From Setoptus koraiensis (Eukaryota; Animalia; Arthropoda), in assembly GCA_048013815.1 (NCBI GenBank), contig CM106586.1, positions 10,850,001 through 10,914,000 of the forward strand: DNA of 64,000 bases, in the 5' to 3' direction. A program made the position numbers and the translations under genes. Within the stretch, counting starts at the first letter, position 1. Each line of letters opens with the position of its first letter. Of this stretch, positions 5,501 through 62,020 are shown in pieces. Under the pieces are notes generated by a model that had not been told where the DNA came from, searched no databases, and worked only from the letters and a program-made list of their open reading frames with translations.

Positions 5501-5895
5501 AGAGCCGAGGGCGAAATATTTAATGAAACTAATTGCTGGCATGATGAATAGTCCTCTATCAGTATTCTGTCGAATAAAACTTGATTCATATTATTGAGTG
5601 TAACATTTTTGTAAAGGTCTATCTTTTTCTCTTCAAATATCCTACTCAAATCTAGACATCTTATTGTTAGATTTGTTCTGGCACGAGCCGCAGACTTGGT
5701 ATTGGTGGTGGTGGTTTGGCTATCATTGGTGGTCTGTTGTTGTTTTGAAGTGGATTCGTTTGAAATTGCAAGGATATTTGCCGATTGCAATTTATCCAAT
5801 AGGATGGTCGTTTGTTCTTGGCTTACAAGAAATCTGAATACATCTATCAGTATGGCATTGATGGTCAACTCTTTAACCTCATCTGTGTCTGCCAT
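2533..5895 (-). CDS. UBE4A: Ubiquitin conjugation factor E4 A (Ufd2 core + U-box), intronless, 1120 aa
   Basis: Motifs NPHLRARFAE, QFEQKFSYRRPMY, FLRFINLLMNDAIFLLDE, and C-terminal U-box DPIMSTLMTDPVLLPSS...HLLSDQTDPFNRSPL. Confidence 0.95.
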   Translation of the reverse strand: MADTDEVKELTINAILIDVFRFLVSQEQTTILLDKLQSANILAISNESTSKQQQTTNDSQTTTTNTKSAARARTNLTIRCLDLSRIFEEKKIDLYKNVTLNNMNQVLFDRILIEDYSSCQQLVSLNISPSALNTPNLDSESVANSFNPADSQILRYLYGCYYRLQQIKSQQKFSFLKDQLTSVENLIIDQVLLYLIQPDVFPDREKRYKSDEQGGSPPLLLNLVTHYLKSAAELHCDIIQRFVDTIGERGGANYDSDSLFTIIKPICTRLSQLFVKISIDDPKVPELVQILRVFVQEPNMAVAFIQFNSLRIDNSVAYQNTLIGYLLSVSSLPRTSQSNCTFFQNPSRLAQSEHNFTETQIGLKLQTIGAEAHKLFHILLKMPQSRGLFLEWLGKCLYTFKDRKKLWSNQLLMATSTISVNDGFLMNLLTAMLHLCEPFVGPYKRTLENAARLDRKLLKIDPRYCKISTVPKSNQVKKPGESGVAAIEQQSKSSNNTAHFLGLCEETFFVDASDEIASFEPQANFISECFYGTHQVMAFSFRSMYERFFKLAQNLTDLQRLFQEASNHASNHGHTNGMDPREIIRDKMDLAMGQFLNLKAVLIVPSRITMLLQFVVSTAAYLNHLVACSSFDEVATTCDFKTITLDTLKEKKTNKTCLKYIPEMLVENIIEYLIFLKNFNESALIQPSISLEPLMTLIIVFMGNPSLMKNPHLRARFAEILECLMPHQASFPGSAYAGQTIGCESLFTEHPLAEEIVPSLVNVFVSIEMTGEGVQFEQKFSYRRPMYLVLKYLWGKQQHRAKLIELADEAERNIESARPPLFLRFINLLMNDAIFLLDEALGYMSTLRETQIQRGTVEWTQMSEQQRAQAEANANHVGRLARFHNVLGLSTISTLAWLTTEVKTIFSHATLVDRVANMLNYFLVHLVGPKMKNFKVKDQNEYEFEPKELVGHICQIYINLGQPVHNTKYRQFCTAVSNDGRSYSTDLLPRACDILFRTGKTSLAVEFQELAKQIHDVAIKNQLDEIPMEDIPDTFIDPIMSTLMTDPVLLPSSHIIVDRSTIARHLLSDQTDPFNRSPLSMEDVIPDSDLRAQIEVFIRDRNVFKQQQQQNNEKKTDTKT

Positions 5896-18701: not shown

Positions 18702-21700
18702 CTAGACACAATAGATGGGGGCGGCCTGTGACGATTGAATCTCTATGTGGGCCATCTTGTATTGAACCTTCTCCAGCCAGCTCAATAGGCGATTGTTGAG
18801 CCTGTCGGCGTCTTGGCGCGACACATCGGGCGGCTGCCACTCGATGCACTTTTGGAGCCTCATGGCCAAGTTGCCCGATTTGCTTCTGCCCTCGTAGGCG
18901 TGAAATACCGAGTTCCATTGAGGCAGGTACTGTGTTGAAAAATTTAACCAACCAATAACAAATTTCGGTTGCGCACGAGTTCCGGTTGCGCACGAGTTCC
19001 GGTTGCGCGAGATTTTCGGTTGCGCGAGATTTTCGGTTGCGCGAGATTTTCGGTTGGAAAAGCGCGAGAGAAGAATCGAGGGTGGAAATTGGAAACGGAC
19101 AGTGGTTAGTTGGTAGTTGTTAGTGGAAATGTTGGTTCGGTGGGGCCGAAATGCCGGTTCGGTGGGCAAAAACTTACTCTGACCAAAATGGACGAATTGC
19201 TCTCGATGAGCGACTCAATTAGTTGCAAGAAATGCGTGCTCACCATCTCGGACATGACCCTGGAATGATCGACGAGTCGCAGCACGCCGGGCGTTATCTT
19301 GGCCCAAAAGTCGTCTAGCATCGATTGACAGAATTGAAATTGTTCGCTAGAGGGCGAATTTTGCTGACAAATACTCTCGCAATACATTGTCCACAATTGG
19401 CACAATAGAAAGGCGTGAAATAAACCTGACATATGGAGTACGCTCTCTTTTGATTGTTCGGCAAAGCAGGCGAGTATGACTTGCACGTGCTCGGCAACGT
19501 TGCCGTTCTTTTCCACAGGTATGGGCTGACAATTGACAGTGTGCGATTGAAAATAGTTCAAATACAGCACCGAATGCTGCAGCGAGCCCAATATAATCCA
19601 GGACAACTGTCTAATGTGCGACACACAGTCTATGAATTCGCGGGGCCCCTGCTGCAGCGACGGCGAGCTGTACAGCCAGGGCATGTAGCGCAGCACGGCC
19701 CTGTTGTCGTTTCCGTTTGTTTGGCTTATTTCTATGGCGAGAAACTGTGATATGCCCGCCTTGACGTGACCGCCGAATGTGTCCCTGTTGACGTACGAAT
19801 GATACGACGAGGCGCCCCCGCCCCCGCCCGCCGACGAGCTGATGAGGTTGTCGTTGATGCGACTAATGGCGTGCACGTCGGTGATGAATTCCAACAGGTC
19901 GCCGTTGTATTGGCGCAAGCATTCGCCCACATTTGTCACGTACGTGCCCGCCTGATTTATGATCGCTTCGTCGATTTTCAGCGTGTCCCGAATGACGCCC
20001 GGCGGCAAAATGCCGCCAACGTCCTGCAATATGAACAATATCAACAACAGCAAATTGTCCTCGAGAATCATGATGCGATACTTGACCACTTGAATGAGCT
20101 CGTAGGCTATGGTGCGCGGAATGAGATACTTTTCGCGATCGCGCCCGAACAACCGGCAACAATTGTGATCTATTTCTAGCAACTGCTCGTACCGGAACTG
20201 CGAATTCAGTATGGTGTAACTGATTATCTTAGCGTAGGGCTCCAGTATGGTCTTGCACGACGACATGTACGACACCTTGGAGGTGGACAATATGATGCGC
20301 ATAATGGGCGTCATTATCATGGAGCACGAGGACGGTATTGAGGTGTCGTTGGCGTTGTTGTTGGCGCCGGCCAGCGCGCCCGACGGCCCGTTTTGCAAAA
20401 ATTGACTTGTGGTAGAGCTGAAATTTGCCGCCGCTTGTTGCCCGCCGGACTGCTGACCCGCGCCGCCGCCCAAGCCCGGCGAACACACCCCGCTCGACTG
20501 GTGATGATTGGCCTGACTTGCGCCGCCGCCCGACGACGACGACGCGCCGCCCGTGCCCGTGTTGCCGCTGTAGCGCGGCAGCGCCAGCAACAGCTTGCGC
20601 AAGAAATTCTCCCACTGGGTCATGAACGCGGTCCACGGAGGCACCGTTATCAGGTCGGTGATGATGCACTCGAAATAGGTGGCCACATTCTCGAGAATGG
20701 TCATTAGAGACGACGCTTGGGGCAAATTCTTCTGTCGGTTGAGGTCGTCGAACAGTTTGCACAATGGCGACAACTGGTTCAAATCGGTGAAATCCGCCAA
20801 CGCGGTGGCCATGCTGCGATAAAATTCGTAATCGGTGAAATGTGACGTAAATATCTGATGGAACACGTTGTTTTCGGCGAGATCGTGCAACGAAACACGG
20901 ATAAATTGACGGGCCACCGACGACGAGCCGCCCACTAGATGCACGTTGCTGCCCGTTTGCCACGAGTAAACGTTAGACATGCTGTAACGGGCCACCAGGC
21001 GCAATATGTTGGGCAGCATGGAGGCGGCCATTGATGGCTCGTGGTGCACAAATGTCTCCAATATTATCATGCAAATAGACAAATCTTTGTCGGAAAATTC
21101 CTCAATGAACGAGTGCCTGTTTATCATGGCGATTTGTTCGTTTAGCGACGACGGCGAAGAAAAACTCATCGGAATGGGCGGAACGGGCGGCGTTGTGCTG
21201 CTGCGTTTGTTGTTGCGGCTTGCACCGCTGCCGGTGCCGTCAGCCAGCCCGCCGGCCGCTTGCTTGCTCGGGCCGGCCGCCGGCCCGAGTTGTTGTTGTT
21301 GTTGTTGTTGCTGCTGCTGTTGCTGCTTCTTGCCCCATTTCTTGCCAGTGCCGGCGGCGCGTTGCTGCGGCTTATCCGCCAGGGCTTGCTCGCAAACGGA
21401 AGTGCTGTCCAAGCTCTTGCGAATGGACGAATGGTGGCTGGCGCCCGCAACAGGTTGCTGCTGATTTTGGGCCGGTTGACGAGAGGCGGCGCTGCTGGGC
21501 GCCTGTTTTTTCTTGTTTGTCTGCTTGTTGACGAGAGACAGATTTGACGACGACGTTGACGCGTCGGGCTCAAACAGCGCATCGGCACCCGCCGCCGCCG
21601 CCGACGACGACTGTTGCGTAATGGTGGCGCTGCTGTTGGCCCGGCCCGTCAGGCCCGCTCTCGCCGTCTTAGCGCCGCCGTGCAGCGACGGCTGGTAGTG

Positions 21701-24700
21701 TTTGGTCTGGTCGGGCGACAACACCACACAGTCGGACTGTTTGGTGGCATTGTGACAACCGGAAGTCGTTGCTTGGCCACCGGAAGTTGCACCGCTGCTG
21801 CTGCTGTTTGTTAGCTGGCCAGCGCTTGATTGAGCTGCTGCTGTTGTTGGTGGTTGCGTCAGCGTAGAACAGTCTATTATCACGGAGGAAGAGGCAGATA
21901 TTGTTGGCTTGTCTGTTGTTGGCTGCTTCGATGTGAGCTGCTCGTGGCTCAATTGGGCCGCTATTGGTGGCGACATTCGAAAACCAACGAATTGGGTGTT
22001 TTCGCCGGCTCGCAGTGCCGCCGCCGCCGCATGCTCGCCGTGCCCGCCGACATGATGGGCAAAATCGCCGGCCGGCTCGTCGGGCCGCAATGGCGAACCA
22101 ACCACGTTCCGAATGGTGGAGCCGTGAGCGGCGCTGTTCAGGTGGGCGCTGTTGTTAGAGTTGAAGCCGGGCCCGATGGGCAGCAGTCGCTCGGCGGCCG
22201 GAAGCGTGATGGTGGAGTTATTTTTCGAGCTAGAGCTGGCGCTGCCCGGCGACACAAGCGACCCGATGGAACTTTGCGAGGCCACGGGCCGGGTGCGCAA
22301 TTCGCGCATATCAATGCCTATGGGCAGCAGGCGCTCCTTGGCCATGCACTGCGAGCCGCTTGCCGCGGGCAAGCGCATTGTATGCTGTGAGCCGGCGGCG
22401 GCTCCCGATTGCGAGCCGGGCTGCAACGCCGGCCCGAACGGATCGCCGGCGCCCGGCACAGCCGGACCCGTGTCGGCACCGGCGTTGTCGTTGATGTCAA
22501 CGGTGGAGGTGGCCGACGACAGCGGATACAGCTTGCTGTCGAAGGATTTCTTTTTCGATTTGGCCTTCACATTCAGGCTGTCGCTTGTGTCCGCCTTGAT
22601 GAGGGCCTTGCCGTGCCTCAACGGGCTACCGCCGCTCGTCGCCTTGAGCAGCGACGGCGAGCTAGTCGAGGGCGTGATGGTGTCCGCGCCGGCCACTGTC
22701 AACTGGTGGTGGTCGCCGCCGGAAGCCGCCTGCGGCGGATTGCCCGCCGACTGTCTGTTCGTTTGGCTCACCTGGCCACTGTCGTCGCGCCGCTGATGAT
22801 GCAAGCCCGTGTGTGTCTGAGCGGTAGTGGCAGCTGACTGTTTCAGCTGGGTGTCCGATGCGCTTGCGTGATGCGCAGCCGCTCTAGTGGCTGGCGCCAC
22901 TTCCGGTTGCAGTTTGGCGCCGCCGCTGGCTGTGGCGCCTGCCCCTGCTTGCGGCAAACTGCTTGGAATTCTGCCACAATTCGCTGCCGCCATGGATTGG
23001 TGGTGTTCGGCGAGCAATTTCGTGGGCGACATGGTCACTTTTCGGGCCGCCTTGTCGGCCGCTTGCAATCGCTGCTTGGCCCTGCTTTGGGCCGCCGTTT
23101 CGGGCGAATGATGATCGGTGGCGCTCGCGCCCTTGCCTGGTGTGCCGGCGGCGCCACCGGAAGTGGATGGTGCGCCGTTGTTGCTGGCGTGCCCATAAGC
23201 GTGATACAAGTTACAGTCCGGTGGTTGTGCAGTTTGGTTGTTGTGCAGCGACAGTGACGGCTCGTTGGCGTTTGTGCCCGCCGAGTCGCGCACCCGCATG
23301 AGGCAGCGGTCGACGGAAGTGTCCAGTTGCGAGCAGCTTAGGTGCGACTCGAGCGTGTTGATGATGATCTGCATGAGCATTTGAACTTGTTTTTTTAGAT
23401 TGGCCTGGCTGAATTGGTATTTGTAGAGGAAGGTTAGCACGGACATTAGCCACGATTGGCGCATTAGCGGATTGAGCAGCCACAGCGAATAGGTGGGCGA
23501 CTGAAGCGCGTCATATTGCACGTCTTCGGGCGCCGGACAATAGACGAGCACGGGCAAGCACGTGTCCAATATGATGCTGCCCAGCGAGTAGTTGAAGTCT
23601 AGTACGCGCGGCAGTGAGCTTAGGAAAGCGTTGAAGACGGGCAATAGTCGCAACGAGGTGGCCGGTATCAGGAAATTCTTGCGAGCGGCCGAGTAGCCCA
23701 TGAGTATATTTAGGTGACGCAATACAATTTGCTGATGCCGGGTCATGGTTTTGGCCGATTGCGGATGCGACGGATCGGGCTTCGAAAAGAACTGCATCAA
23801 CAGAAATATGAGCGAGTGGTTTGTGTCGCGGTCCTCGTCCGACACCCGATGCACCACGCTAAAGATGTGATTCTCTTGGGCGAGCTCGTTCATGACGCGC
23901 CCGTCATCTATGAGCGAATTGGGCAAATGCTGGTGCAGCTTGTCGGGCAGCAGCGGGCCCACGTTGGTGATGGCCGACATAAAACGGGAATTTTTGCGCT
24001 TTATGAGCGACTGTGACGTCAAATAGGCGATCGATTGATGGCGCGACGAGGTGCTCTTGCCGTGCTGCAGCACCTTGGCCGCCTGGCCGGCCTTGCCCGC
24101 CGCGTGGTCCGTCTGTTGCGCGGGATTGGCCGGATGCGTCTGATTCGCGGCCGGGTACGGGCCGGCCTGCTGTGCGCCGGACGGGCCGGCCTGAGGCGCA
24201 CAGTTAGCCTGATTCACACAGTTGGGGCCCAGCTGCTGCCTGTACTGGGCGCACAGGTCCTTGCGGCGCAACTGCAACTTGTCGCTCATCCGGTACGACA
24301 GCGAGCGCGACAGGTGCGTCTCGCGCAGCGCCTCCTTGGCGCGGCCGATCTTGCGCTGATACAGCTCGTTGGTGGTGTTGGCACTCTTGAGGCCCTGAAT
24401 GGCACTTCCGGTTATCTCGCCCGTCTGCTGCAGGTATATTTGGGCCTCGAGGAAGAGCGTGTCGAAGCGGTTCAAAAAGAAGTCCCACGTGAGAAAGCGC
24501 CGGTCGCTGAGATGATTGTACAACTGGAAGACGCTTTGCAGTATCATGGGCCGGTCGATGATGATGCTGTCAAACTGGGTCTCGAGGCACCACAGCAGCA
24601 GCTTCAGCGCCGACGTGTTCATCATCTCGAGGCTGAGCAGGGCCCGCTGGGCCACGGTGGCCTCTATGTCGTCCAGGCAGCGCACCACGTAACAGAAGGC

Positions 24701-27700
24701 GTTTGCCATGGACGATTGCAACAGGGTCGAGTTGCGTATTGTGTCGGGATCGCAAAAATACGCAATGGTTACAACGCGTTCCACGGCCCGGAAACGCGAC
24801 AGCCACTGGTCGTTGTTGAAATCTTGCTCCACTAATTCGCGAAACAATCGTACGCCCCACGGAAGTGTTATGCAATGCAATAGTAACGGTACGCAAATTC
24901 GCGCTATTTCGCTAGATTCCAGTTGGCACAGTGACCACAATTTGCCCATTAGCATATTGTGCTGACACCAAATAATGAATTGGGGCTGCGATTTGGCCGC
25001 CTTGCCCAACACCTGAGAGTGCAGCGATATGAGCTTTATCATTTGCAACAGCTGACACACAATGTCGGGCGTTTGGTACTGGTGAAACTGAATCAACAGA
25101 TTGTAGGTGAGCTGCAGCTCGCTTGATAGCGAGCTCAGTATTTCCGGCCGCAGCGTCGGCCCGAAGTAGCTGGGCGAGAAGGGCGAATTGGGCTGCGGAT
25201 TGAGCGGGCCGGGCGAGTACAGCAGATAATCGGACGATTGTTGCTGTTTGAGCTGCTGTTGCTGCTGCTGGCCTGCTGGCTGCGAAAAATCAAACTTTGT
25301 CGCAACGGGGGCCCGGCCGGCCTGGCCCCCGGTCAGCGGAGCGTCGCCGCCGGCCGGCGCCGCGGACGCGGGACCCGGCGCAAAGTTGCTGTAACAGCTC
25401 ATTGTTTGCTGGCTGGCCATCATCTGCTGATAGTTTTCGGGCCGCGAGCAGAACTCGCCGTTGGCCGCGTCTTGGCTCACCTCGCAAATGCTCACTTCGA
25501 TGGTGGGCGAAAAATAGTTGATGAGCGTCGAGGCCAACTGGTAAAAGGTGCTGATCATTTCGCAAAAAACGCACGACTCGTACACGTCCTCCTGTTCGAA
25601 GCCCTCGATGCAGTGGCTGAACGCGTTCGGATTCACGTCCGCGCCCTGGTCCGCGCCGCCGGGCGACTTAGCGCCGGGTCCCGGCGCTGCGGCGGCGGCC
25701 GCCGCCGCTGCCTGCTGAATGGCCTCAATGCTGGCCTCGACGGAACCGGCCGACTGGCCGGCGTTTTCGCCCGCGAGCACGTTGTCGCTGCACGTGTGCT
25801 TGCCGATCCACGGCGTGGTGATGATGTCGTTGAGCAAATTGATCGCTTGCTGGGCCTCGCGGCCGTCGAGGCCCTTCTGGGCGGCCACTTCCTGCAGGTC
25901 CAGTTGCTTGAGCAGAATGTCCACCATGAGTATGTAGCAGATGAGGTTGCTGTCGATCTGGTTGAGCCACTCGGACTGGGCCGCCTGCTGTTTTTGGGCG
26001 CCGCCGCAATCGTGGCCGCCGGCCGGCTTGCCCGCAAGCTCGTCCGCCGCCTGGGGCCCGCCGCTGACCTGCTTGTGCAGCGCTTGGTGCAGCGGGCCCG
26101 ACGGACCGGCTGCTGTCGCGGGCACGGCGCTCGCGCTGCCCGGATACTTTTGTACGGCGGTCTTTTTGCTGGCGGCGGCGGCGGCCGGCGACGCCTTGGG
26201 CGGCGACCCGACCAGCGGATCGGCGCCCGGCTGCCCGGCCAGCAGCTTGTTGCTAGCGGCCGAGCTCGATGCGGACAGCTTGCTAGTGTGCTGCAGCAGC
26301 TGCTGCGAAAAGATGGTCTTGGCGTCGGCCGCTGTTTCGGGCGTGGGCGTGGGCGGAATGGTGTCGTTGTCGTCGCTGGTGGTGTCGCCGTTGCCCGTCA
26401 TTTCGCTGTCGACGTTGCCCGTGGTGGTGTTGTTGTCCATGTTTGAGTCCTCGTTGTCGGACGAGCCGTTGTTGTTGTGACCGTGGATAGTTTTGTTGCC
26501 GCGCTCGGGGGCGCTTGCGTCGGCGCTGGGGCCCGGCGCGGTGCTGCTGTGTGCGCAAATGTCCGAGAAGCGGTCAATTTCGGCCAGCTTTGACGCGATG
26601 CGCATTCTGTTGAGCTCGTGCGAGCGCATTATCGCCAGCGATTTCACGCCCGACTTGAGCATCTTGTACAGAAAATCGATTGGTATGGGTATCTCGAGCA
26701 TGGTGAGTATTTGCAGCCAATACAGGGTCTGTTCTTGGTCGCCGTGGTTTGTGTTGGACGAATCCTCGAATCTGTTGCTAATGAACGAGTACATTTGTGT
26801 TGTTTCGAAGCCCAACGGGCTCAGCTCCGGATCGAACACCTTGCTGAGCAGTATCTTGAGCTCGCTGAGCTCGTTTTCGGGCACCTCGTGCCGGAAGCAC
26901 TCCATCCAGTAGGGCATTATGAGGTCCCAGACGTCGTCGGTGATGATGTCGTACGGGACGAGGCACAGCAGCCGCTTGAAGCCCTCCTTGATCTGGTGCG
27001 CGGTGTCCGGCCACACCTCCCAGTGGCCGCCGATTTTCGAGCAGTCTATCGGATGGGGCAACAGGCACGATATAAACACGTCCTTGCGCTCCTTTTTTAC
27101 CTCCATTATCCAGCCCTTGATGCATTCGCCCTTCAACTTTTCCAGGGCGCTGCCCGCCTGATCGTCGGGCAAACAAGCCGTGAAATGGAACCACTGGAAC
27201 AGCATGCCCAGCAGCCTACCGAGCAGTTCGTTATTGATTTCGCTCACCGACTTACACAGGCCCGTCATGAGCCAAATGCCGTACTGACTGATGAGCTGAC
27301 GCTCCTCGGTCGCTATAGTCAGGTCGCGATTGTCCGTGCTAAACTGCGACGTTGGGCCCATCAGCGATCGCAAATATCGCTCGCTGTCCTTGGAGGGCCT
27401 ATCGGCGGGAATGGCCTCCTTCAGCAAACTGATAATGGCCTCAATGAAATTGTTTATGTTTTCCTCATTGTCCATAATGTTTATCATGAGCGACGAGTGC
27501 GTTATGTGATTCTGTAGCGTTTCGTCGAAATTGTTTTTCTCCGACGGTGTGTGCTTCAAATACAAACATTCCTTGCAATACCTGATCGGTTTCTTGCAGT
27601 TGTAATTGGCGCACTCAATGTCGAAACAAGTGCCAATGGCCGTCTTGTCGACCGATTGACACTTCTTGTTCTCACAATAGTCGCTAATTTGCTCCATGGG

Positions 27701-28906
27701 CAACAGCAAATCAATGAACTTGGCCTGGTCGTCCGTGCGAATGGCCTGGCTAGCGGCCCCGGCCCCGGCCGGCTGAATAGCGTCCGCCAGTGGCGCAAAG
27801 TTTTCCTTTTGGCAACTGTTAAATTGATCCTTGTATATCTGACCCACACAGTCTAAACAGATCAACATGGGCGGCGGATGATCGCACAAATTGATCGATA
27901 TGGCAAAATCTAGACACATTTTGACGGCCTCATTGTCGGCTATGGTGCAAGAACAATTCTTGTTTTGGCACTTGGATGGCACCCAGCTCACGTGCTTGCT
28001 CTTGAGGGCCTTCCGGTCCTGTGCGCTGGGATTTATGTCGGGCCAGTAGCGAAATAATATCTCGACGGCCGGACAGCGGGCTCGCGTTGTTCCGTACGCT
28101 ATGACGAACAACAGATCCTCGAACACGTTCTGTTTCAGCTTCATCAGACACTCCACCAGTTGGCTGTGATAAGCGGGCTCCGAAATGTAATGAAACGATA
28201 TCATGAGTATGCTGGCCACGCTTAAATTTGCAAAATCGCCGCACGCGCCAGACTGAAAATCTAGCTCTTTGCTGATGGTTGCGTCCGATTTTGTTGTTTG
28301 TTGCGTTGGTTTAACCGTCAATTGATTGCTATTCTGGCTCTTGGCTTGGTTTGTGGGGCCCGGCTTGGCGAAGTCCGAGTTACCGTTGTGGTGCTGGTGG
28401 TGCTGTTGTTGTTGTTGCTGTTGTTGCTGGTCAATGGTGAAAGGAAGCAAATTGTAACACAGTGTGTCGAGCAATTCCTTGTGTATGCTAACTGGAAACG
28501 ATATCAGTGTTGAGGTCAACAAATAGGGCAGTGTCTCCATGTAGGAATGCTCCAGAAATGGCATTAGACAGGCCAACAGATTCAATAATTGTTCGCCCAG
28601 CACGTCGGTGTTTGTTTGCACCAATGGAAATATGTCAATCAATTGAACAATAATATTGTATAGTCCGACATAGTCAAAATTAGGCAACATGGCCAATCTG
28701 GACTTGTCTTTATCACGGGCATGTAAGGGTATGTTTTCGATGTCCTTGAAGTCTTTGAAGTCTCTCAATACTTGACAAAAATAACGTAACATGTTTGACA
28801 TTTCAATGCCGGTGGGCTGTGGCAAAATACCGTTTTGTATGCGGTGTATGTGATCCTGCAGATTGGATATTTTGCCGGCGAAGGCGGCGGCACGAGTGCC
28901 CATCAT
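18702..28906 (-). CDS. UNC79: UNC79 (NALCN channel complex subunit), about 3318 aa; exons 28906-19178 and 18929-18702
   Basis: N-terminus MGTRAAAFAGKISNLQ; motifs LFVIAYGT, LFRYWP, LFQWFHFTA, WLSRFRAVERV, LTWDFFLNRFDTLFLEAQI, RDTFGGHVKAGISQFLAIEI. Intron 19177-18930 (GTAAGT...ACAG, phase 0) joins the terminal exon YLPQWNS...WLEKVQYKMAHIEIQSSQAAPIYCV*. Confidence 0.95.
18964..19055. repeat. 17-bp minisatellite x5.5 inside the single UNC79 coding intron
   Basis: Units T(T/C)CGGTTGCGCACGAGT x2, then T(T/C)CGGTTGCGCGAGATT x3, then a partial unit. Confidence 0.9.
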
Positions 28907-31159: not shown

Positions 31160-34100
31160 TCATAAATTATTTTCACGATATAATATCAAGGAGCAACGCA
31201 AAGAAAACATTAGTTGCTTGAATTCCCTCTCCAGGGCGTCTAATCTTTTCAAAGTCATGGTAGAGGTCTGACTGAGTTTTTCGTCGCTTCTAAATTCCTC
31301 AACTCTATTCTTTGTCTCTTGTCTGGAGCGATTTATCTTGTCCATAACCTCGTTGAACCATTGATAGCTTTCAAATTGATTTGTTTGATCCAATATAGTA
31401 AGTATGAATGCAACTCCGATGGGAAATCCATCGTCGCTCAATGCAGAGCCTATCCTGTTGTTGACAGTTCGAGAAGATAAACGTTCCTTACAAGCCATTA
31501 TATAGTGCACATAGTTTATAGTAAGCGCAGGTAATATGATGGAGAAATTCTTCAAATGATCACTTTTATTCAAGTTACTGCTACTTGTTGTTGACGATGA
31601 TATGCTTCCACTTTGATTTGCAGATGATGAAAGTTCGCTCGATTCACCTGTCATGGCGGAAGTATCCGAGTTACCCATGGGTTTATCTGCGTGTGTAGCC
31701 CGAAATGTTTCTCTGAATACCGACACCAATATAGAGAAATAGTTAGTTTTTGAAGTGAAATTCTTATTCAGGTCCTCTAGGCATAAGTCGAAATTTTCTG
31801 TAGCTTTTATGAGAACCGGTTCGTCGGGATATTCCGTTTTTGCCGATTCTAGCAAGCGCAACTCATTTAAATCATCCAGATCAGGTATAAAGTTCACAGA
31901 TTCAGATACACAATTCAAGGCTCCACTCCTGAGCATTCTCACAAAAGCCAATGCATTACCAATTTGGGTGATGTTATTACGTAAAACGTCCAAATAATTG
32001 ACGGAGTTAGATTGAACGCTAGTATCTCCGGCTTGTTCTTGGTGTTGAGGCAAACTATGTTTTTTCAAATAATTCAATAGACGGTCGGCTCTCTCATATG
32101 AGTATTTGTCGTCACCTGGTGTACCATTAGAATTGATATTTTCTTTAAAATTGCACATATCCTTTGTAAGTCGCAATCTGACGTGTTCATCGTGCAGATA
32201 TTGAGAAAAAGCACTCAATTGTCTCCTTAATAATTGATAAGTAAAATTAACAGCCGTGTTGATTATACCAAAACCATGAGTTTTGATTGAATTGGCCACA
32301 TGCTTGATCAACACCACATTCAACTGTCTATTGAAATAATGTTGTTGTTGTCTATTGCTGATGATACTTTGATTACTATTGTCATTCTGTGGATTTCCTA
32401 TGATGGTCTTTTCAATAAACATTTGATTGTGAAGATTGTGGTTATATCGTGCCACAAACAAACTAAGATTACGGGTAATGCCCAAAATATCTAAGCCTTG
32501 CTCTAATGTCTGGGTGGGCAATTGATTATCGACAAACGTCAAGCCATACTTGTGCCGAGCCATATTCATCATGGTATCGTAGGTGAACCAATCGTGTCGT
32601 GCAATTGAAGTTAAATTGTAACAAATCTTATCCAGATGATATTCAACCTCTTGTTTGATCGAGATGAAGTTATCAAAGTAGCGAAGAGGAACGCAGCTTA
32701 GAAGCCTCTTGAAATTGTATAAGTGCCTTTTGAACGGACTCTGGTCATTCAGTTGTAAATCGCGATGTGTTTGTAAGCGTAGTTCAGTTTCAAATTCTTG
32801 GCAAATCTTATCTAAGAAATCTATCCTCAGTCTTTCGTATATGTCCTTCTCAACGTTGTTCATTAATTCTTGGCCTATCTCTTTTAGTGATTGTGTTGAC
32901 TCGTTACTGGTTGCTTCCATGGCGTCATCAATTTCTGCGGGCTCATCGGCATGGAAATTCAACACTTGTTCATCAATCATGTACAAACGTTTAATATCTG
33001 ACAAGGACAACAGAAAATATCTTAACTCATCTAGTGGGCACGGGTTCTCCTCAAGGCAATAGTTGAAGTAGGTACCAAATGTTGGAATGCTCCAGTAAAG
33101 AAAACTACAGTCGGCACTAGCAGATAAATACTCATAGATGCGCAAGTCGAAAGATTGCGATAACGAGTTGAGTTTAGATATCTCAGAACTTTCCAACACT
33201 GGTGCAATAACAGGTAGACAAAGTGATATCAGTATTTGTCTCGCATTAGTTAACATTGAGCCATTCAAGCAATTTGCAGTTAATATAATAGCGGAAATCA
33301 TATCCAACTTCTTTTCTGAATACTTGTGTACTTGATTGCTAAGTTTTCTCCTCAATGAAGACATCAATCGTAATAGTTGTGTAGATCTAAGCTGATTCAA
33401 ACGAATGATAGATTCCTGGATGAGTGACTTGTGTCGCTCAAAACTAACCTGAATGGACTTGATCAACGGGATCATACGGAGAACTGATATTAGGTTGGAT
33501 TTAGTCATTGGTTTGGCATGATGAAGATAGATAGCCATTAAAGATTTCACATAGTACACCATCATATTGATCAAGCTTATGCCGCTCTTGTATAAACTAG
33601 CTCTGGATTCAAGCGTGTGGATGTAGTTCTCTGATAATTCTTTGTGTTTCATTGACTCCGTTTCAAAATCAACCAACCAATAAGTTACGCGAGATGTGAA
33701 TATTTTAAGATCTTTTTCTATAGGCACTCGTAATAATGAATCTCGCTGACTAGACAACGAATTTAAAAAGCTCTTATCAATCATAGACTTGGAAACATGC
33801 CGGGCGAGAAATTTCTCCAATAAAATATATGAATTTGATCCGAATAAATGTATCAAATAAAGTTCTTTGCGTTTCTGACAATCCATTATATTACGCAACA
33901 GCCTCCTGTCTTCCTTTTTGAATATCCAAGTGTAAACAATAAAAATACTTGATATTCCTAACAATTTTTGATCATCACGCCGTAACAAACTGGAACTTGG
34001 GGTATAACTAGTTGGGGAAGACTGCATGATTCGTTCCAAAGAATACTTGATAAAGTTGTTCAGGTGATCCATGAATTGATTGTCGATGGGAAGCGTCTTT

Positions 34101-35108
34101 GGTGACACTGTTTGCATTTGCTCTATGCACTGACTGAATATTGATTTCTTTTCGTCGAGAAGATTGATATCAATTTGATTGATGAATCTCGACAATGTTT
34201 GCAGTTTGCTTATTTGATTCTGCATATCCACCAAAGTAGGATTCGCTAATATTGTGTCAATAGTTCGTTTGTAATTGATCAGATTCAACCTGAGATTTGT
34301 GTGATTAGTTAAAATATCGTCCAAGCTGATTAAAGTTACCAGCAATTCCATAAGACTCACAAATATAGCATTGAACATTGTATTTGAAGGTAAATCTGGC
34401 ACTATCATTTTGGATGGCACAGAGTTGTTTGAGATCAGGCAGAGGTAACGGTGCATCTGGCTTATTGTAGATTTTATAACAGTAAAACAATGGTCAACAA
34501 AATTGAGAAGATCACGCATCAATGGCAATATGTCCGAGACCAGGTTGAGTTCAGTGATCAATTGCGTATTGGTAACAGATAATCTCGAGCCCGGTTGCGT
34601 TGGAGTATACTGTTTGTTGGCCATTTTGGTTCCATAGGCATAGGTCATGATTGCTTTCATGTAATATTCGATGGCTTCAATGGACAAAAAGTTCATTTCA
34701 TTGATGCACGTGGCGAAAACTAGCATCATCTTGGACAGTTGACTATTACCACAGGTCGCCAGTAATTCTTGCAGGTCGGTTCTTTCTGTTACGTCATCAT
34801 CAATATATGAGAATAAGCTCGTTGATTCAGCTGTGAAATTGGTGAAAAATTTGCTATTCTCAGCGTTTATTACACGTTTGCCATCAGTCAACTTGTTGAT
34901 GAGATCTCGATATTCTAAAGCAACGTCTTTATCTGTGTCAACTGTACATACGAAAGTGAAACACAACATCGAGGAAGGTTGAGATTAGACCAAGCTTTAT
35001 AATTGACTAGGTTGAACAGGATGCCCGTTAAGTATGTAAAGCTGGAAACAACTTACCCTCGAGAAACCTGTCGAAGTCGGTTCGTGATGTTCCGCCGGTG
35101 GAGGACAT
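31160..35108 (-). CDS. WASHC4: WASH complex subunit 4 (SWIP/KIAA1033), about 1277 aa; exons 35108-35057 and 34941-31160
   Basis: Motifs LDKICQEFETELRLQTH, QTLEQGLDILGITRN, HVANSIKTHGFGIINTAVNFTYQLLR, QIGNALAFVRMLRSG, DDGFPIGVAFIL. A short first exon MSSTGGTSRTDFDRFLE has a GTAAGT phase-1 donor and a matching acceptor (an alternative AG lies 9 nt downstream). Confidence 0.93.
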
Positions 35109-59352: not shown

Positions 59353-59700
59353 CTAATACAACGCCTCTGGCGGCCGACTTTGCCGTTGTCCTTAAAATGC
59401 AGATATATACCGGAGACAAATAATAAATCTCTATTATCTAACTGTTGTAAACTCACATTGTTGTCGTCAGAAGAAAATTCAGATGAAAATACTCATCTAC
59501 TGCTCTTAATATTCTGGCATCTAGATATTATCTGATAGCACCCCGAGAACGCTTAGAGAAATCTTCATCTCTAGACGGAAGCAATGTCAATCGCGAGTCA
59601 CGCTTGGAAATCAGTCAAATCACATGTACCTCTAATTAAATTCAGGAAGGCTCAGCCGATCAGGGATCATGCCGAGCTCAAACTCACAAAAGCCACTTCC
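59353..59700 (+). repeat. Left arm of a roughly 350-bp inverted duplication (partner at 61665-62020), covering the KGD4 upstream region and first 39 codons
   Basis: Shared blocks CAACGCCTCTGGCGGCCGACT, TACCGGAGACAAATAATAAATCTCTATTATCTAACTGT, AATTCAGATGAAAATACTCATCTA, GAGAACGCTTAGAGA and the coding start. Confidence 0.93.
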
Positions 59701-60480
59701 ACCTCGTCTATTAGAGATCATGCCCAACTAGATCGCACTGAAGCCAGTTCCACCCTGTCTATTAGTGGAATGAGACAAACGATCGCAAAGAGGCTAATGG
59801 AAAGCAAAAGACAGATACCTCACAGTTACATGTCCATCGAATCTGATGTTACACAATTGATTAGACTCAGGCAGCAGATCAATCGTAGCACGGCTGCTCA
59901 AAAAGTCTCTCTGAACGACTTCATAATTAAGATCGCTGCCGTAACCCTAAGGCAGGTTCCACAAATCAATGCTCGCTGGAACGAACCAACGCAATCTGTA
60001 GAACTCTTACAAAATGTAGATATCTCACTTGCGGTTGCCATACCGGATGGTCTGATAACGCCAATAGTCAAGAACGCAAACTCTCAAAGTGTACTATCAA
60101 TATCTCGTATTGTGAAAGATCTCGCAGCTCGAGCGAAGATAGGCAAATTGCAACTGGACGAGTTTCAAGGAGGCAGTTTCAGCCTGTCTAATCTTGGAAT
60201 GTTTGGCATTGATCATTTCAGCGCTATTATAAATCCTCCTCAAGCTGCCATTTTAGCGATCGGTCGAACGAGGCAGGCATTTGTCGCCTCCCAAAGTAGC
60301 CACCCCATGATGGCCACAATTGATGATGAAAAGTATGGCATCGACAACGTTCGAGTAGCTAATTTAATGAACGTAACGCTCTCATATGACTCAAGGGTTT
60401 GTGAACAGCAAGATGTGGCAAAATTTTTAGAAACATTTAAATTTTTTGTAGAGGATCCGTCTAATGTTGTTAGCACATGA
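59584..60480 (+). CDS. Chimeric protein: KGD4/MRPS36-derived N-terminus (aa 1-39, plus a 17-aa duplicated segment) fused to the PDHX/E3BP C-terminal core domain; no lipoyl or PSBD domain; 298 aa
   Basis: N-terminus is 32/39 identical to the KGD4 gene at 61782. Remainder: MRQTIAKRLMESK, VSLNDFIIK, FQGGSFSLSNLGMFGIDHFSAIINPPQAAILAIG and YDSRV (Ser in place of the catalytic His of DHR, as in PDHX). AATAAA at 60543-60548. Confidence 0.85.
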   Translation: MSIASHAWKSVKSHVPLIKFRKAQPIRDHAELKLTKATSTSSIRDHAQLDRTEASSTLSISGMRQTIAKRLMESKRQIPHSYMSIESDVTQLIRLRQQINRSTAAQKVSLNDFIIKIAAVTLRQVPQINARWNEPTQSVELLQNVDISLAVAIPDGLITPIVKNANSQSVLSISRIVKDLAARAKIGKLQLDEFQGGSFSLSNLGMFGIDHFSAIINPPQAAILAIGRTRQAFVASQSSHPMMATIDDEKYGIDNVRVANLMNVTLSYDSRVCEQQDVAKFLETFKFFVEDPSNVVST

Positions 60481-60744
60481 TGATCATCAAAAATGTGTGT
60501 GTTTTCATGTTAAGTTTGATTTTTCCGTCTGTACATTAGAATAATAAAAGAATTCAAATGCTACGAGTATCCCTAATTGATGAAAAACTCTGCACCTTCG
60601 TTGTTGCTTGATTTTTGATATTAACAAATGAGCACAAGTGAAAATGCTGTATCAACTAGATAGACTATTGAAGCGAACAAGCTACATTTTATTTAACCAC
60701 TGACCTTGGTCAGAATCATACAGTATGTTATAGTTTCATGATTA

Positions 60745-60912
60745 CTACTGAGCGGCACCTTCTTTTCTAACCGTATCTACTCTTTTGATGGTGGCCTCGC
60801 CCTGGTCTGGGTATTTGCTTCTTGCATCCTTTTTGATTGCCTGCCTAAGCTGACGAGCGGCAATCTGTGAAAATCTCAGATAGTTTAGTCCTAGTTCACG
60901 CCAATAAACCAT
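60745..60912 (-). CDS. ATP5F1E: Mitochondrial ATP synthase F1 epsilon subunit, copy 2 (55 aa)
   Basis: Hand translation MVYWRELGLNYLRFSQIAARQLRQAIKKDARSKYPDQGEATIKRVDTVRKEGAAQ*; too short to appear in the ORF track. Minus-strand AATAAA at 60693-60688. Confidence 0.9.
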   Translation of the reverse strand: MVYWRELGLNYLRFSQIAARQLRQAIKKDARSKYPDQGEATIKRVDTVRKEGAAQ

Positions 60913-61256: not shown

Positions 61257-61782
61257 CTATAGGCGACCACCATTCTATAATGACGAATAAAAAGATTGAA
61301 GGAAAAGAGTTAACAAAAAAATTTTTAGTTGCAGAGAATCTGTGGCTAGATCATGAACAAATTGTTGGAGCTGAATTGTTTGATTCCAAAGACGTTCAAC
61401 TACTAACATTTATGATCTCTATCTCTAGCTCGCTGGGCAGCTTCCTTGCAAAGGTTGCACCAATGCTCCTGACCGAAAGATCCTGAAAAAATACATTGGA
61501 TAGATTAATGAGCATTGAGAATTATATCTTATGAGTGTCGTTGATGATGAGATATAAATTTGTATTGTGAATGAATTCATTTAAGTCTCTTCCGCTTACC
61601 TGAGTTTGTTGGTGAGCTGGTATGCGAAGACTCTGTTTCAGGCCAGTTGTATTGAAAGCCGTCGCAGAACTGGCCTTAATGAGATTCAGTTCGGCATGGT
61701 CGCTTATTGATTGAGCCTTCCTGAATCTGATTAGGGGTACATGTGATTTGACTAATTTCCAAGCGTGACTCGCAATCGACAT
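61257..61782 (-). CDS. MRPS36: KGD4/MRPS36 (2-oxoglutarate dehydrogenase E3 adaptor), 91 aa; exons 61782-61600, 61482-61408, 61274-61257
   Basis: N-terminal motif AWKLVKSHVPLIRFRK (family: VKPH.PLI.F) and spliced C-terminus FARKLPSELEIEIINNGGRL* (family: yrRk.is.eEie.I..GG). Donors GTAAGC and GTTAGT, acceptors TTTTTCAG and TTATAG, all phase 0. Confidence 0.85.
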
Positions 61783-62020
61783 GGCTTCTGTCTATAAGTA
61801 AAGATTTCTCTCTAAGCGTTCTCCGGGGCACTATCGGATGATGTCGAGATGCAGTAATAGCAGTAACGATAGATGAGTATTTTCATCTGAATTATCCTCT
61901 GACAACTATGTGAGTATGCAACAGTGTACAGTTAGATAATAGAGATTTATTATTTGTCTCCGGTATTTATTTGCATCGTACGGTCAATAACAGAGTCGGC
62001 CGCCAGAGGCGTTGTGTTAG
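61665..62020 (-). repeat. Right arm of the inverted duplication (native KGD4 upstream region and 5' CDS)
   Basis: Reverse complement aligns with 59353-59700. Confidence 0.93.

What the first reader, a model, noticed from the sequence alone, without database searches (positions are those of the whole stretch)
59584..60480. KGD4-PDHX chimera: candidate re-engineered E3 tether for pyruvate dehydrogenase
Seen: an intact 298-aa ORF whose first 39 aa are 32/39 identical to the neighbouring KGD4/MRPS36 gene (first 24 codons: 5 synonymous vs 2 replacement differences). It is joined in frame to a complete PDHX/E3BP inner domain with the non-catalytic DSR motif, has no lipoyl domain and no PSBD, and has its own AATAAA. 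Established: E3BP inserts into the PDH E2 core through this domain and recruits E3 via its PSBD. KGD4 is the adaptor recruiting the same E3 (DLD) to 2-oxoglutarate dehydrogenase; as I recall, its N-terminus contacts E3 and its C-terminus the E1/E2 core (this mapping should be verified). Inference: the chimera replaces E3BP's native E3-binding module with KGD4's and docks it on the PDH core, a cross-complex domain swap I do not know from any organism. Alternatives: the KGD4 piece acts only as an import signal, or the protein is a core-filling modulator competing for E3.
Basis: partly seen in the sequence, partly recalled or inferred. Interest (0 to 1): 0.92.

Follow-up and report, generated by a model that had tools for sequence, protein, structure and literature searches.

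The report
KGD4-head, E3BP-core chimeric mitochondrial gene
A mite-like animal genome carries an old, well-preserved gene joining the E3-grabbing head of the 2-oxoglutarate dehydrogenase adaptor KGD4 to the core-forming body of pyruvate dehydrogenase's own E3-binding protein; this would be a natural swap of E3-recruiting modules between two enzyme complexes, but expression and E3 binding are untested.

Summary
ORF 59584-60480 (+) is intact (298 aa). Residues 58-295 form a PDHX/E3BP-type inner core: Pfam PF00198 E=3.5e-74, catalytic His replaced by Ser, placed inside the animal PDHX clade. There is no lipoyl domain or PSBD in the ORF or elsewhere in the window.

Residues 1-39 and about 230 nt upstream are an inverted duplicate of the neighbouring two-exon gene. 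I show that gene is a KGD4/MRPS36 orthologue, although Pfam misses it. A 51-nt tandem duplication extends the KGD4-derived part to residue 59.

The gene is old and under selection:
- In the shared 39 codons there are 13 synonymous and 7 replacement differences (omega about 0.1).
- The coding arm has no indels; the upstream arm has 25 gap columns.
- Only 2 of 71 highly conserved core columns differ.

Published work confirms that the KGD4 N-terminus binds E3 at the PSBD site. Transcription was not shown, E3 binding could not be modelled, and whether a canonical PDHX persists elsewhere is unknown. The chimera is not at the ancestral PDHX locus. No relative or published precedent was found. The scan had also noted the inverted duplication separately (s1-307639).

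The parts
59353..59583 (+). Duplicated KGD4 upstream region (putative promoter and 5'UTR) in front of the chimera. It is 87% identical to 61783-62020 on the minus strand and holds perfect 22-nt (59358-59379) and 34-nt (59407-59440) blocks.
59584..59699 (+). Codons 1-39, copied from KGD4 exon 1. Codons 1-24 carry the KGD4/MRPS36 N-terminal motif M..AS....VK.H.PLI[RK]F, which is the published E3-binding end.
   Evidence: PMC4214781 and PMC9974300
59659..59760 (+). Two tandem 51-nt units (59659-59709 and 59710-59760, 75% identical). They encode IRDHAELKLTKATSTSS / IRDHAQLDRTEASSTLS and form a predicted disordered linker of about 34 aa.
59755..60477 (+). PDHX/E3BP-type inner (core-forming) 2-oxoacid_dh domain, aa 58-298. 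The fold matches PDH E2/E3BP cores.
60388..60396 (+). D269-S270-R271: Ser replaces the catalytic His of the DHR motif. This is the non-catalytic, E3BP-type state.
60543..60548 (+). AATAAA polyadenylation-signal consensus, 63 nt after the stop codon (60478-60480).
61667..62020 (-). The other arm of the inverted duplication: the KGD4 upstream region plus its first 39 codons.
61396..61782 (-). Neighbouring KGD4/MRPS36 orthologue. Exon 1 is 61782-61600, the intron 61599-61483 (GT..AG), and exon 2 is 61482-61396 including the stop. The spliced product is 89 aa, with N- and C-terminal KGD4 motifs.
60745..60912 (-). Single-exon ATP synthase epsilon subunit gene lying between the chimera and KGD4 (context, not part of the chimera).

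Best explanation
This is a real, old chimeric nuclear gene kept by selection. An inverted DNA duplication copied the promoter region, 5'UTR and first 39 codons of KGD4/MRPS36. It placed them in frame before a relocated copy of the PDHX (E3BP) gene, truncated at its 5' end, that keeps only the inner core domain. A later 51-nt tandem duplication lengthened the linker.

The most likely function is a minimal E3 tether for the pyruvate dehydrogenase complex:
- The E3BP-type inner domain inserts into the DLAT (E2p) core, as E3BP does.
- The disordered KGD4-derived N-terminus (aa 1-24, motif VKSHVPLIKF) carries the protein into mitochondria and binds the E3 (DLD) dimer on the surface normally used by a PSBD.
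- The roughly 34-aa duplicated linker gives reach similar to the canonical PSBD-to-core linker.

Shown: the anatomy, the origin by duplication, and selection on both halves. From the literature: the KGD4 N-terminus is sufficient for E3 binding. Inferred: transcription, import, core insertion and E3 binding of this particular protein.
For: - **Core domain.** It has PF00198 at E=3.5e-74. The best solved relative is human PDHX 6h60, at 2.7e-53. It has SYDSRV like mite PDHX. It sits inside the animal PDHX clade (SH-aLRT 97) within the mite-containing group (94). The AlphaFold core is confident, with TM 0.85-0.88 to PDH E2/E3BP cores. Only 2 of 71 columns that are at least 90% conserved differ (T153I, I201L), within the 0-7 range of genuine PDHX/E2 proteins.
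- **The neighbour is KGD4.** An HMM of 120 database MRPS36/KGD4 proteins aligns end to end with the spliced 89-aa product. It scores 19.2 bits, against a maximum of 11.0 in 2000 shuffles. Chimera aa 1-60 score 16.4 bits, against a maximum of 10.7.
- **Selection.** Codons 1-39 give dS 0.83, dN 0.08 and omega 0.10. Fisher p=5e-6 for synonymous versus non-synonymous differences. If the chimera lineage were neutral, P(7 or fewer replacements) is 1e-6 to 1e-2. The coding arm has no indel, against 25 gap columns in the upstream arm. At that indel rate, P(no frameshift in 894 nt) is about 6e-5, and P(no stop) is 0.14 to 0.0003.
- **Promoter.** The upstream region is more conserved than synonymous sites (p=3e-5) and has perfect 34- and 22-nt blocks. 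This implies that the KGD4-type promoter is constrained in both copies.
- **Literature.** Kgd4 aa 1-68 pulls down only E3. The N-terminally deleted construct needed an added targeting signal (PMC4214781). The MRPS36 N-terminus cross-links to E3 and is modelled occupying the PSBD site (PMC9974300).
- **No hidden canonical exons.** tblastn with eight PDHX proteins finds no lipoyl or PSBD coding sequence anywhere in the window.
- **Independent DNA support.** Contigs from several studies hold the stretch. A 260-nt contig from another organism label spans the linker-core join at 98.5% identity.
Against: - **No transcription evidence.** Two RNA runs had no reads from this organism at all. The only contig over the gene (X11, labelled 'RNA?', depth 2) comes from a run with no coverage of the neighbouring ATP5E and KGD4 genes, so it may be stray DNA.
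- **Thin statistics.** The selection estimate on the N-terminus rests on 39 codons and is pairwise, so part of the constraint belongs to the KGD4 lineage. If the less diverged upstream region (13%) is taken as the neutral rate, constraint on the first 24 codons is not significant.
- **Long branch.** The core sits on a long branch (0.73 against a median of 0.06).
- **Interactions untested.** E3 binding and DLAT docking could not be modelled here.
- **KGD4's role is itself questioned.** One mammalian OGDHc study did not detect KGD4 in the native complex (PMC11436768).
- **No family support.** Pfam PF10937 recognises neither the neighbour nor the chimera, and no orthologue of the chimera was found in any collection.
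Confidence: 0.5

Rival explanations
1. Import-signal capture only. A PDHX copy truncated at its 5' end lost its presequence and gained mitochondrial targeting from the duplicated KGD4 5' end. The mature protein is an E3BP core subunit without E3-binding capacity. It acts as a structural filler or modulator of the E2p core, changing the E2:E3BP ratio and the number of E3 sites.
For: In yeast the Kgd4 N-terminal half carries the targeting information: the construct lacking it needed an added MTS (PMC4214781). Residues 1-25 of the chimera have five Lys/Arg and no acidic residue, which is typical of a presequence. Co-opting a neighbour's 5' end is a classic way to rescue a relocated mitochondrial gene. 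The chimera is not at the ancestral PDHX locus, so a canonical E3BP may still supply the PSBD.
Against: Presequences usually tolerate many substitutions. Here the exact KGD4 motif is kept, 22/24 identical with two substitutions (L10S, R19K), at dS about 0.43 for those codons (omega 0.08). The same N-terminus in KGD4 must survive import to bind E3: mammalian N-terminal residues cross-link to E3. A nearly identical sequence should therefore also stay on the chimera. A core subunit with no E3 or lipoyl function has no obvious benefit that would hold an ORF open for this long.
Confidence: 0.22
2. Cross-complex regulator. The protein binds E3 through the KGD4 head but acts mainly by competing with KGD4/OGDH and canonical E3BP for the shared DLD pool, or by bridging PDH and OGDH. 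On this reading it partitions E3 between complexes and is not the main PDH tether. It would be co-regulated with KGD4 through the duplicated promoter.
For: The duplicated upstream region is strongly conserved in both copies, which suggests shared regulation with KGD4. E3 is shared among the 2-oxoacid dehydrogenase complexes (PMC9974300). The relocated-copy status leaves room for a canonical E3BP.
Against: Nothing here separates this from the simple tether model. It needs the same unproven E3 binding and core docking, plus an additional quantitative effect.
Confidence: 0.15
3. Non-functional relic: an untranscribed or decaying partial duplicate whose open frame is fortuitous.
For: There is no transcription evidence. 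The branch is long. No orthologue was found. Scan notes suggest this genome holds several first-exon-capture chimeras, so such rearrangements may be frequent here and mostly neutral.
Against: A 298-codon ORF is intact despite arm divergence of 13-50%. P(no frameshift) is about 6e-5 at the local indel rate. Of the highly conserved core columns, 69/71 are kept. Omega is about 0.1 in the shared codons.
Confidence: 0.06

Closest known systems
PDHX / E3-binding protein (protein X) of animal pyruvate dehydrogenase complexes
   Same: Same inner-domain family and clade. The catalytic His is lost (DSR instead of DHR). The presumed role is to sit in the E2p core and hold E3.
   Different: It has no lipoyl domain and no PSBD. 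The E3-binding module is replaced by an unrelated short linear motif from KGD4. It lies outside the conserved Kv-channel/UQ_con/PDHX/HSP20 microsynteny seen in Oppia nitens and Halotydeus destructor.
KGD4 / MRPS36 (E3BPo), the E3 adaptor of eukaryotic 2-oxoglutarate dehydrogenase
   Same: It shares the N-terminal conserved motif, which was copied from the neighbouring KGD4 gene together with its promoter. That N-terminus is the E3-binding end.
   Different: It lacks the KGD4 C-terminal motif that binds the E1o/E2o core. An E3BP core domain of about 240 aa takes its place, so the predicted docking partner is E2p, not E2o.
Lipoyl-less PDHX of spider mites (Tetranychus urticae 318 aa, Panonychus citri 316 aa) and similar unnamed proteins
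   Same: These are reduced E3BP architectures in acariform mites, showing that the lipoyl domain is dispensable there. Overall size is similar and the core is fast-evolving.
   Different: Those proteins keep a normal presequence and a recognisable PSBD (GPSVRNLL...). The chimera has neither.
Fungal protein X (Pdx1/PX) of PDH
   Same: It is another case where E3 tethering to PDH was solved with a non-canonical core-binding arrangement. PDB entries 6zlm and 7r5m appear among the fold matches through their E2 chains.
   Different: Fungal PX keeps its lipoyl domain and PSBD and changes the core-binding end (from my own knowledge; no tool result here tests it). Here the core end is canonical and the E3-binding end is changed.

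Membership tests
PDHX / E3BP | C-terminal 2-oxoacid_dh inner domain grouping with PDHX rather than catalytic E2 | tested here: met
   PF00198 at E=3.5e-74. PDHX 6h60 is the top PDB sequence hit. The domain sits inside the animal PDHX clade, SH-aLRT 97. Fold TM is 0.85-0.88.
PDHX / E3BP | Loss of the catalytic His in the DHRxxDG motif | tested here: met
   S267-Y-D-S-R271, the same SYDSRV as oribatid-type PDHX sequences.
PDHX / E3BP | Peripheral subunit-binding domain (PF02817) that binds E3 | tested here: not met
   No PF02817 hit at E<=10. An HMM of 25 mite-type PSBDs scores the N-terminus at -1.7 bits, and 1129 of 2000 shuffles score as high.
PDHX / E3BP | N-terminal lipoyl domain (PF00364) | tested here: not met
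   No PF00364 hit. tblastn finds no lipoyl-coding sequence anywhere in the window. Tetranychid PDHX also lacks it.
PDHX / E3BP | Incorporation into the E2p core and recruitment of E3 | not testable with these tools
   This needs multimer modelling with the species' DLAT and DLD, or biochemistry.
KGD4 / MRPS36 | Conserved N-terminal motif (E3-binding end) | tested here: met
   The HMM of 120 database KGD4 proteins scores chimera aa 1-60 at 16.4 bits, against a shuffle maximum of 10.7. The motif VK.H.PLI[RK]F is aligned at the N-terminus.
KGD4 / MRPS36 | Conserved C-terminal motif (E1o/E2o core-binding end) | tested here: not met
   The HMM alignment of the chimera stops at model position 49-50. 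The neighbour gene, not the chimera, carries RKLPSELEIEII.
KGD4 / MRPS36 | Match to Pfam PF10937 (Kgd4-YMR31) | tested here: not met
   No hit for the chimera, for either exon, or for the spliced 89-aa neighbour protein. The model seems insensitive to this lineage.
Processed or decaying pseudogene | Disrupted frame, relaxed constraint, poly(A) remnant | tested here: not met
   The ORF is intact. 69/71 conserved columns are kept. Omega is 0.1 in the shared codons. No A-tract follows the 3' end. Absence of introns tells us nothing here, because canonical mite PDHX has a single 5' intron.

The most novel reading that the evidence does not exclude
The chimera is the only E3BP left in this lineage. 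The PSBD, otherwise universal in E3BPs, would then have been replaced by KGD4's short linear motif. PDH and OGDH would recruit their shared E3 through the same peptide, expressed from duplicated copies of one promoter. That would be a natural proof that the two unrelated eukaryotic E3-tethering solutions are interchangeable.
Probability: 0.2. Interest if true: 0.85.

Novelty: new variant of a known kind. Interest (0 to 1): 0.62.

Why it matters
Eukaryotes evolved two unrelated ways to hold the shared E3 enzyme on 2-oxoacid dehydrogenase cores. PDH uses E3BP with its folded PSBD. OGDH uses KGD4/MRPS36 with a short N-terminal motif.

How KGD4 binds E3 is known only from cross-links, pull-downs and models, and one cryo-EM/cryo-ET study of the native mammalian OGDH complex questions whether it is a stoichiometric subunit at all.

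This gene grafts the KGD4 head onto the E3BP core and has been kept by selection. It would be in vivo evidence that:
- the KGD4 head is an autonomous, portable E3-binding module equivalent to a PSBD;
- E3BP needs neither its lipoyl domain nor its PSBD to be useful.

It also gives a compact natural construct of 298 aa for structural and biochemical work on E3 recruitment. Finally, it is a clean example of new-gene origin by capture of a promoter and first exon.

Tried and rejected
1. **Canonical PDHX with upstream exons.** Rejected. tblastn with eight PDHX proteins finds nothing but the core in 64 kb. The upstream neighbour on the same strand is the end of an SLC6 transporter gene.
2. **N-terminus as a degenerate PSBD.** BLAST extended alignments into it, but the similarity is no better than shuffled sequence.
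3. **Ancestral PDHX locus with swapped 5' exons.** Rejected. The conserved neighbours (Kv channel, UQ_con, HSP20) seen in two distant mites are absent from the window.
4. **Exon shuffling at an intron boundary.** Rejected. Canonical mite PDHX has only one intron, near residue 48, and the KGD4 homology ends inside KGD4 exon 1.
5. **Confirming KGD4 by standard searches.** These failed: Pfam, the word-indexed search, phmmer against 1.84 billion representatives (only spurious repeat proteins), the ESM Atlas and PDB. Identity was settled only with an HMM built from mammalian MRPS36 proteins. The bait matched database entries named MRPS36/KGD4 at up to 99% identity.
6. **Looking for the fusion elsewhere.** None of the 120 nearest PDHX/E2 proteins has the motif. 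JGI metagenome contigs give at best 45% identity. The exact protein and five other window proteins are not in the 15-billion-protein collection. No paper was found on such a fusion.
7. **Transcription.** The single read-laying run gave no usable RNA evidence.
8. **P0030 as sister of the chimera.** This is probably long-branch attraction. Identity is only 47%.
Full report
**1. What is in the sequence**

The ORF at 59584-60480 (+) is open for 298 codons. An in-frame TAG lies 12 nt upstream of its ATG, as it does in the neighbour gene.

Pfam finds a single domain, 2-oxoacid_dh PF00198, over residues 55-295 (E=3.5e-74). It finds no lipoyl (PF00364) or E3_binding/PSBD (PF02817) domain. The best solved relative is the human PDHX chain 6h60 (2.7e-53), just ahead of DLAT cores. 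The alignment shows S-Y-D-S-R where catalytic E2s have D-H-R.

Among the 120 nearest database proteins, the PDHX-type ones carry Ser, Ala, Gly or Arg at this position and the bacterial E2s carry His. SYDSRV is exactly the form found in oribatid-type PDHX. AATAAA follows 63 nt after the stop.

**2. The N-terminus and its source**

Residues 1-39 match the start of an ORF on the minus strand beginning at 61782 (BLASTP E=4e-20).

At the DNA level the similarity is an inverted duplication, 59353-59699 against 61667-62020. It covers about 230 nt upstream of the ATG (87% identical, 25 gap columns) and the first 116 coding nt (83.6% identical, no gap).

Two perfect upstream blocks, 34 nt and 22 nt, occur only in these two arms within the window.

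Downstream of codon 39 the chimera carries a 51-nt tandem duplication (75% identical). The KGD4-derived unit ISDHAELNLIKASSATA therefore appears twice, as IRDHAELKLTKATSTSS and IRDHAQLDRTEASSTLS. PDHX homology starts at 59755, residue 58.

**3. Is the neighbour really KGD4?**

Standard searches failed:
- Pfam PF10937 hits neither exon nor the spliced product.
- The word-indexed search found no candidate.
- phmmer over 1.84 billion representatives gave only spurious repeat proteins.
- The Atlas and PDB gave nothing.

I spliced the gene from the sequence. Exon 1 is 61782-61600, the GT..AG intron follows, and exon 2 is 61482-61396. The product is 89 aa.

The search returned 233 proteins that their sources name MRPS36 or alpha-ketoglutarate dehydrogenase component 4, at up to 99% identity to the bait. 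The evidence therefore rests on database sequences, not on my recall.

An HMM of these proteins aligns end to end with the 89-aa product. It pairs MASASRVVQVVKPHTPLIRF with MSIASHAWKLVKSHVPLIRF at the N-terminus, and RKLVSQEEIEFIQ with RKLPSELEIEIIN at the C-terminus. The score is 19.2 bits, against a maximum of 11.0 in 2000 shuffles.

The chimera's first 60 residues score 16.4 bits, against a shuffle maximum of 10.7. The neighbour is thus a KGD4 orthologue, and the chimera retains its N-terminal motif as VKSHVPLIKF.

**4. The literature mapping**

- In yeast, Kgd4 residues 1-68 co-purify E3 (Lpd1) but not Kgd1 or Kgd2. The C-terminal half binds the Kgd1-Kgd2 core and needed an added targeting signal for import (PMC4214781).
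- In bovine and mouse mitochondria, N-terminal residues of MRPS36 cross-link to the FAD/NAD and dimerisation domains of E3, and C-terminal residues cross-link to E2o. In the model, MRPS36 occupies much of the PSBD-binding surface of E3 (PMC9974300).
- A caveat: a study of native pig OGDHc did not detect KGD4 (PMC11436768).

**5. Is the gene alive?**

In the 39 shared codons there are 13 synonymous and 7 replacement differences (dS 0.83, dN 0.08, omega 0.10). In codons 1-24 there are 5 and 2 (omega 0.08). Synonymous versus non-synonymous differences give Fisher p=5e-6.

Suppose all constraint lay on the KGD4 lineage and the chimera lineage were neutral. Then 16-29 replacements would be expected, against 7 seen (P=1e-2 to 1e-6).

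The two replacements in the motif region, L10S and R19K, appear to lie on the chimera lineage. This is judged from the mammalian residues at those positions.

The coding arm has no indel, while the upstream arm has about 8 indel events. At that rate, 894 nt would accumulate about 14 indels per lineage, so P(no frameshift) is about 6e-5. P(no stop) is 0.14 to 0.0003, depending on which divergence is taken as neutral.

In the core, only 2 of 71 columns conserved at 90% or more among 52 PDHX/E2 proteins differ (T153I, I201L). Genuine proteins differ at 0-7 of them.

The upstream arms are significantly more conserved than synonymous sites (p=3e-5). I read this as constraint on a shared promoter and 5'UTR. 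Gene conversion is an alternative explanation.

Together these results make a decaying copy very unlikely. They also date the fusion as old, not recent.

**6. Origin**

The core groups inside the animal PDHX clade (SH-aLRT 97) and the mite-containing subgroup (94). Its branch is long, at 0.73. Its pairing with P0030 is flagged as possible long-branch attraction, and identity to P0030 is only 47%.

Canonical PDHX in Oppia nitens and Halotydeus destructor lies in conserved microsynteny: Kv channel, UQ_con, PDHX, HSP20. None of those neighbours is in this window. The flanking genes here are an SLC6 transporter, ATP synthase epsilon, KGD4 and an SMC protein.

The core is therefore a relocated partial copy that landed next to KGD4.

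Canonical mite PDHX has only one intron, near residue 48. The lack of introns therefore says nothing about retroposition, and the junction is not an exon boundary. No lipoyl or PSBD coding sequence exists anywhere in the 64 kb.

**7. Structure**

AlphaFold2 with a 53-sequence alignment gives a confident core and a disordered N-terminus: pLDDT is mostly below 50 over residues 1-59 (four segments: 1-23, 27-34, 38-41, 49-59), with pTM 0.70. Foldseek places the core with PDH E2 and E3BP cores at TM 0.85-0.88.

The N-terminus is not a cryptic PSBD. The predicted architecture is a short linear motif, a flexible linker of about 34 aa, and the core. The linker length is close to the roughly 28-aa PSBD-to-core linker I counted in Oppia PDHX. 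That comparison is my own inference.

**8. Independent presence and expression**

Contigs of public runs under three organism labels, from five studies besides the source sample, hold 27-99% of the sampled words. The junction is therefore not an assembly artefact.

Expression could not be tested.
- Two poly(A) RNA runs chosen by species label had no reads on the chimera, ATP5E or KGD4, so the organism is not in those runs.
- One 260-nt contig from a run guessed to be RNA covers 59705-59964 at 98.5% identity. It has two replacement codon changes and one synonymous change.
- That run lacks ATP5E and KGD4 coverage, so the contig is probably stray DNA.

**9. Mechanism and rivals**

The E3BP-type core docks the protein into the E2p core. 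The KGD4 head, which in its native protein is both the import-competent end and the E3-binding end, recruits the DLD dimer.

The main rival is that the head was captured only for import. The tight conservation of the exact motif argues against this, as does the fact that the near-identical KGD4 head must survive import to work. Neither argument is proof.

A third reading is a regulator that partitions E3 between complexes. A dead relic is unlikely.

**10. Novelty**

I found nothing comparable:
- No KGD4 motif in the 120 nearest PDHX/E2 proteins.
- No relative in JGI metagenomes.
- No exact copy in the 15-billion-protein collection.
- No paper describing such a fusion.

Lipoyl-less PDHX proteins that keep the PSBD do exist in spider mites and in several unnamed sequences. 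Loss of the lipoyl domain is therefore not new. Replacement of the PSBD by the KGD4 head is.

I file this as a new variant of a known kind (E3BP). The scan noted the underlying inverted duplication independently (s1-307639). It also lists other first-exon-capture chimeras in this genome, which I did not test.

Noticed in passing
P0042, P0024, P0030, P0075, P0088, P0065, P0019 (database proteins): Several PDHX proteins of 316-342 aa consist of presequence, PSBD and core with no lipoyl domain. They include Tetranychus urticae and Panonychus citri. Loss of the E3BP lipoyl domain seems recurrent in mites or related lineages.
   Followed up: partly
L002:2203-18422 and L003:3181-14214: The microsynteny Kv channel (BTB_2/Ion_trans), UQ_con (-), PDHX (+), HSP20 (+) is conserved between Oppia nitens and Halotydeus destructor. 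This marks the ancestral PDHX locus of acariform mites. None of these genes is in the window.
   Followed up: yes
window 59358-59379 / 61994-62015 and 59407-59440 / 61933-61966: Perfect 22-nt and 34-nt blocks are shared by the two upstream arms, although synonymous sites are about 50% diverged. They are candidate promoter or 5'UTR elements of KGD4, or gene-conversion tracts.
   Followed up: partly
window 60745-60912 (-) and 61396-61782 (-): Two very small mitochondrial protein genes sit head to tail: ATP synthase epsilon (55 aa, single exon, PF04627 2e-11) and KGD4 (89 aa, two exons). Pfam PF10937 does not recognise this KGD4.
   Followed up: partly
window 19106-28906 (-), 31160-34969 (-), 2533-5895 (-): There are very long uninterrupted ORFs: UNC-79 (3266 aa), a protein matching the Pfam WASH complex subunit 4 and 7 models (WASH-4_N, WASH-7_mid, WASH-7_C; 1269 aa) and Ufd2/UBE4 (1120 aa). 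The genome appears intron-poor, so lack of introns does not mark retrocopies here.
   Followed up: no
same genome, other windows (scan notes s1-314191, s1-314190, s1-303146): First-stage notes list other chimeras formed by capture of a promoter or first exon: PABP exon 1, LMBRD1-PPCS and 14-3-3-UGP. If real, this genome may be prone to such fusions.
   Followed up: no
P0121, P0122 (database proteins): The only 'significant' phmmer hits to KGD4 exon 1 were highly repetitive proteins whose scores add up over 5-18 repeats. This is an example of spurious E-values from tandem repeats.
   Followed up: yes
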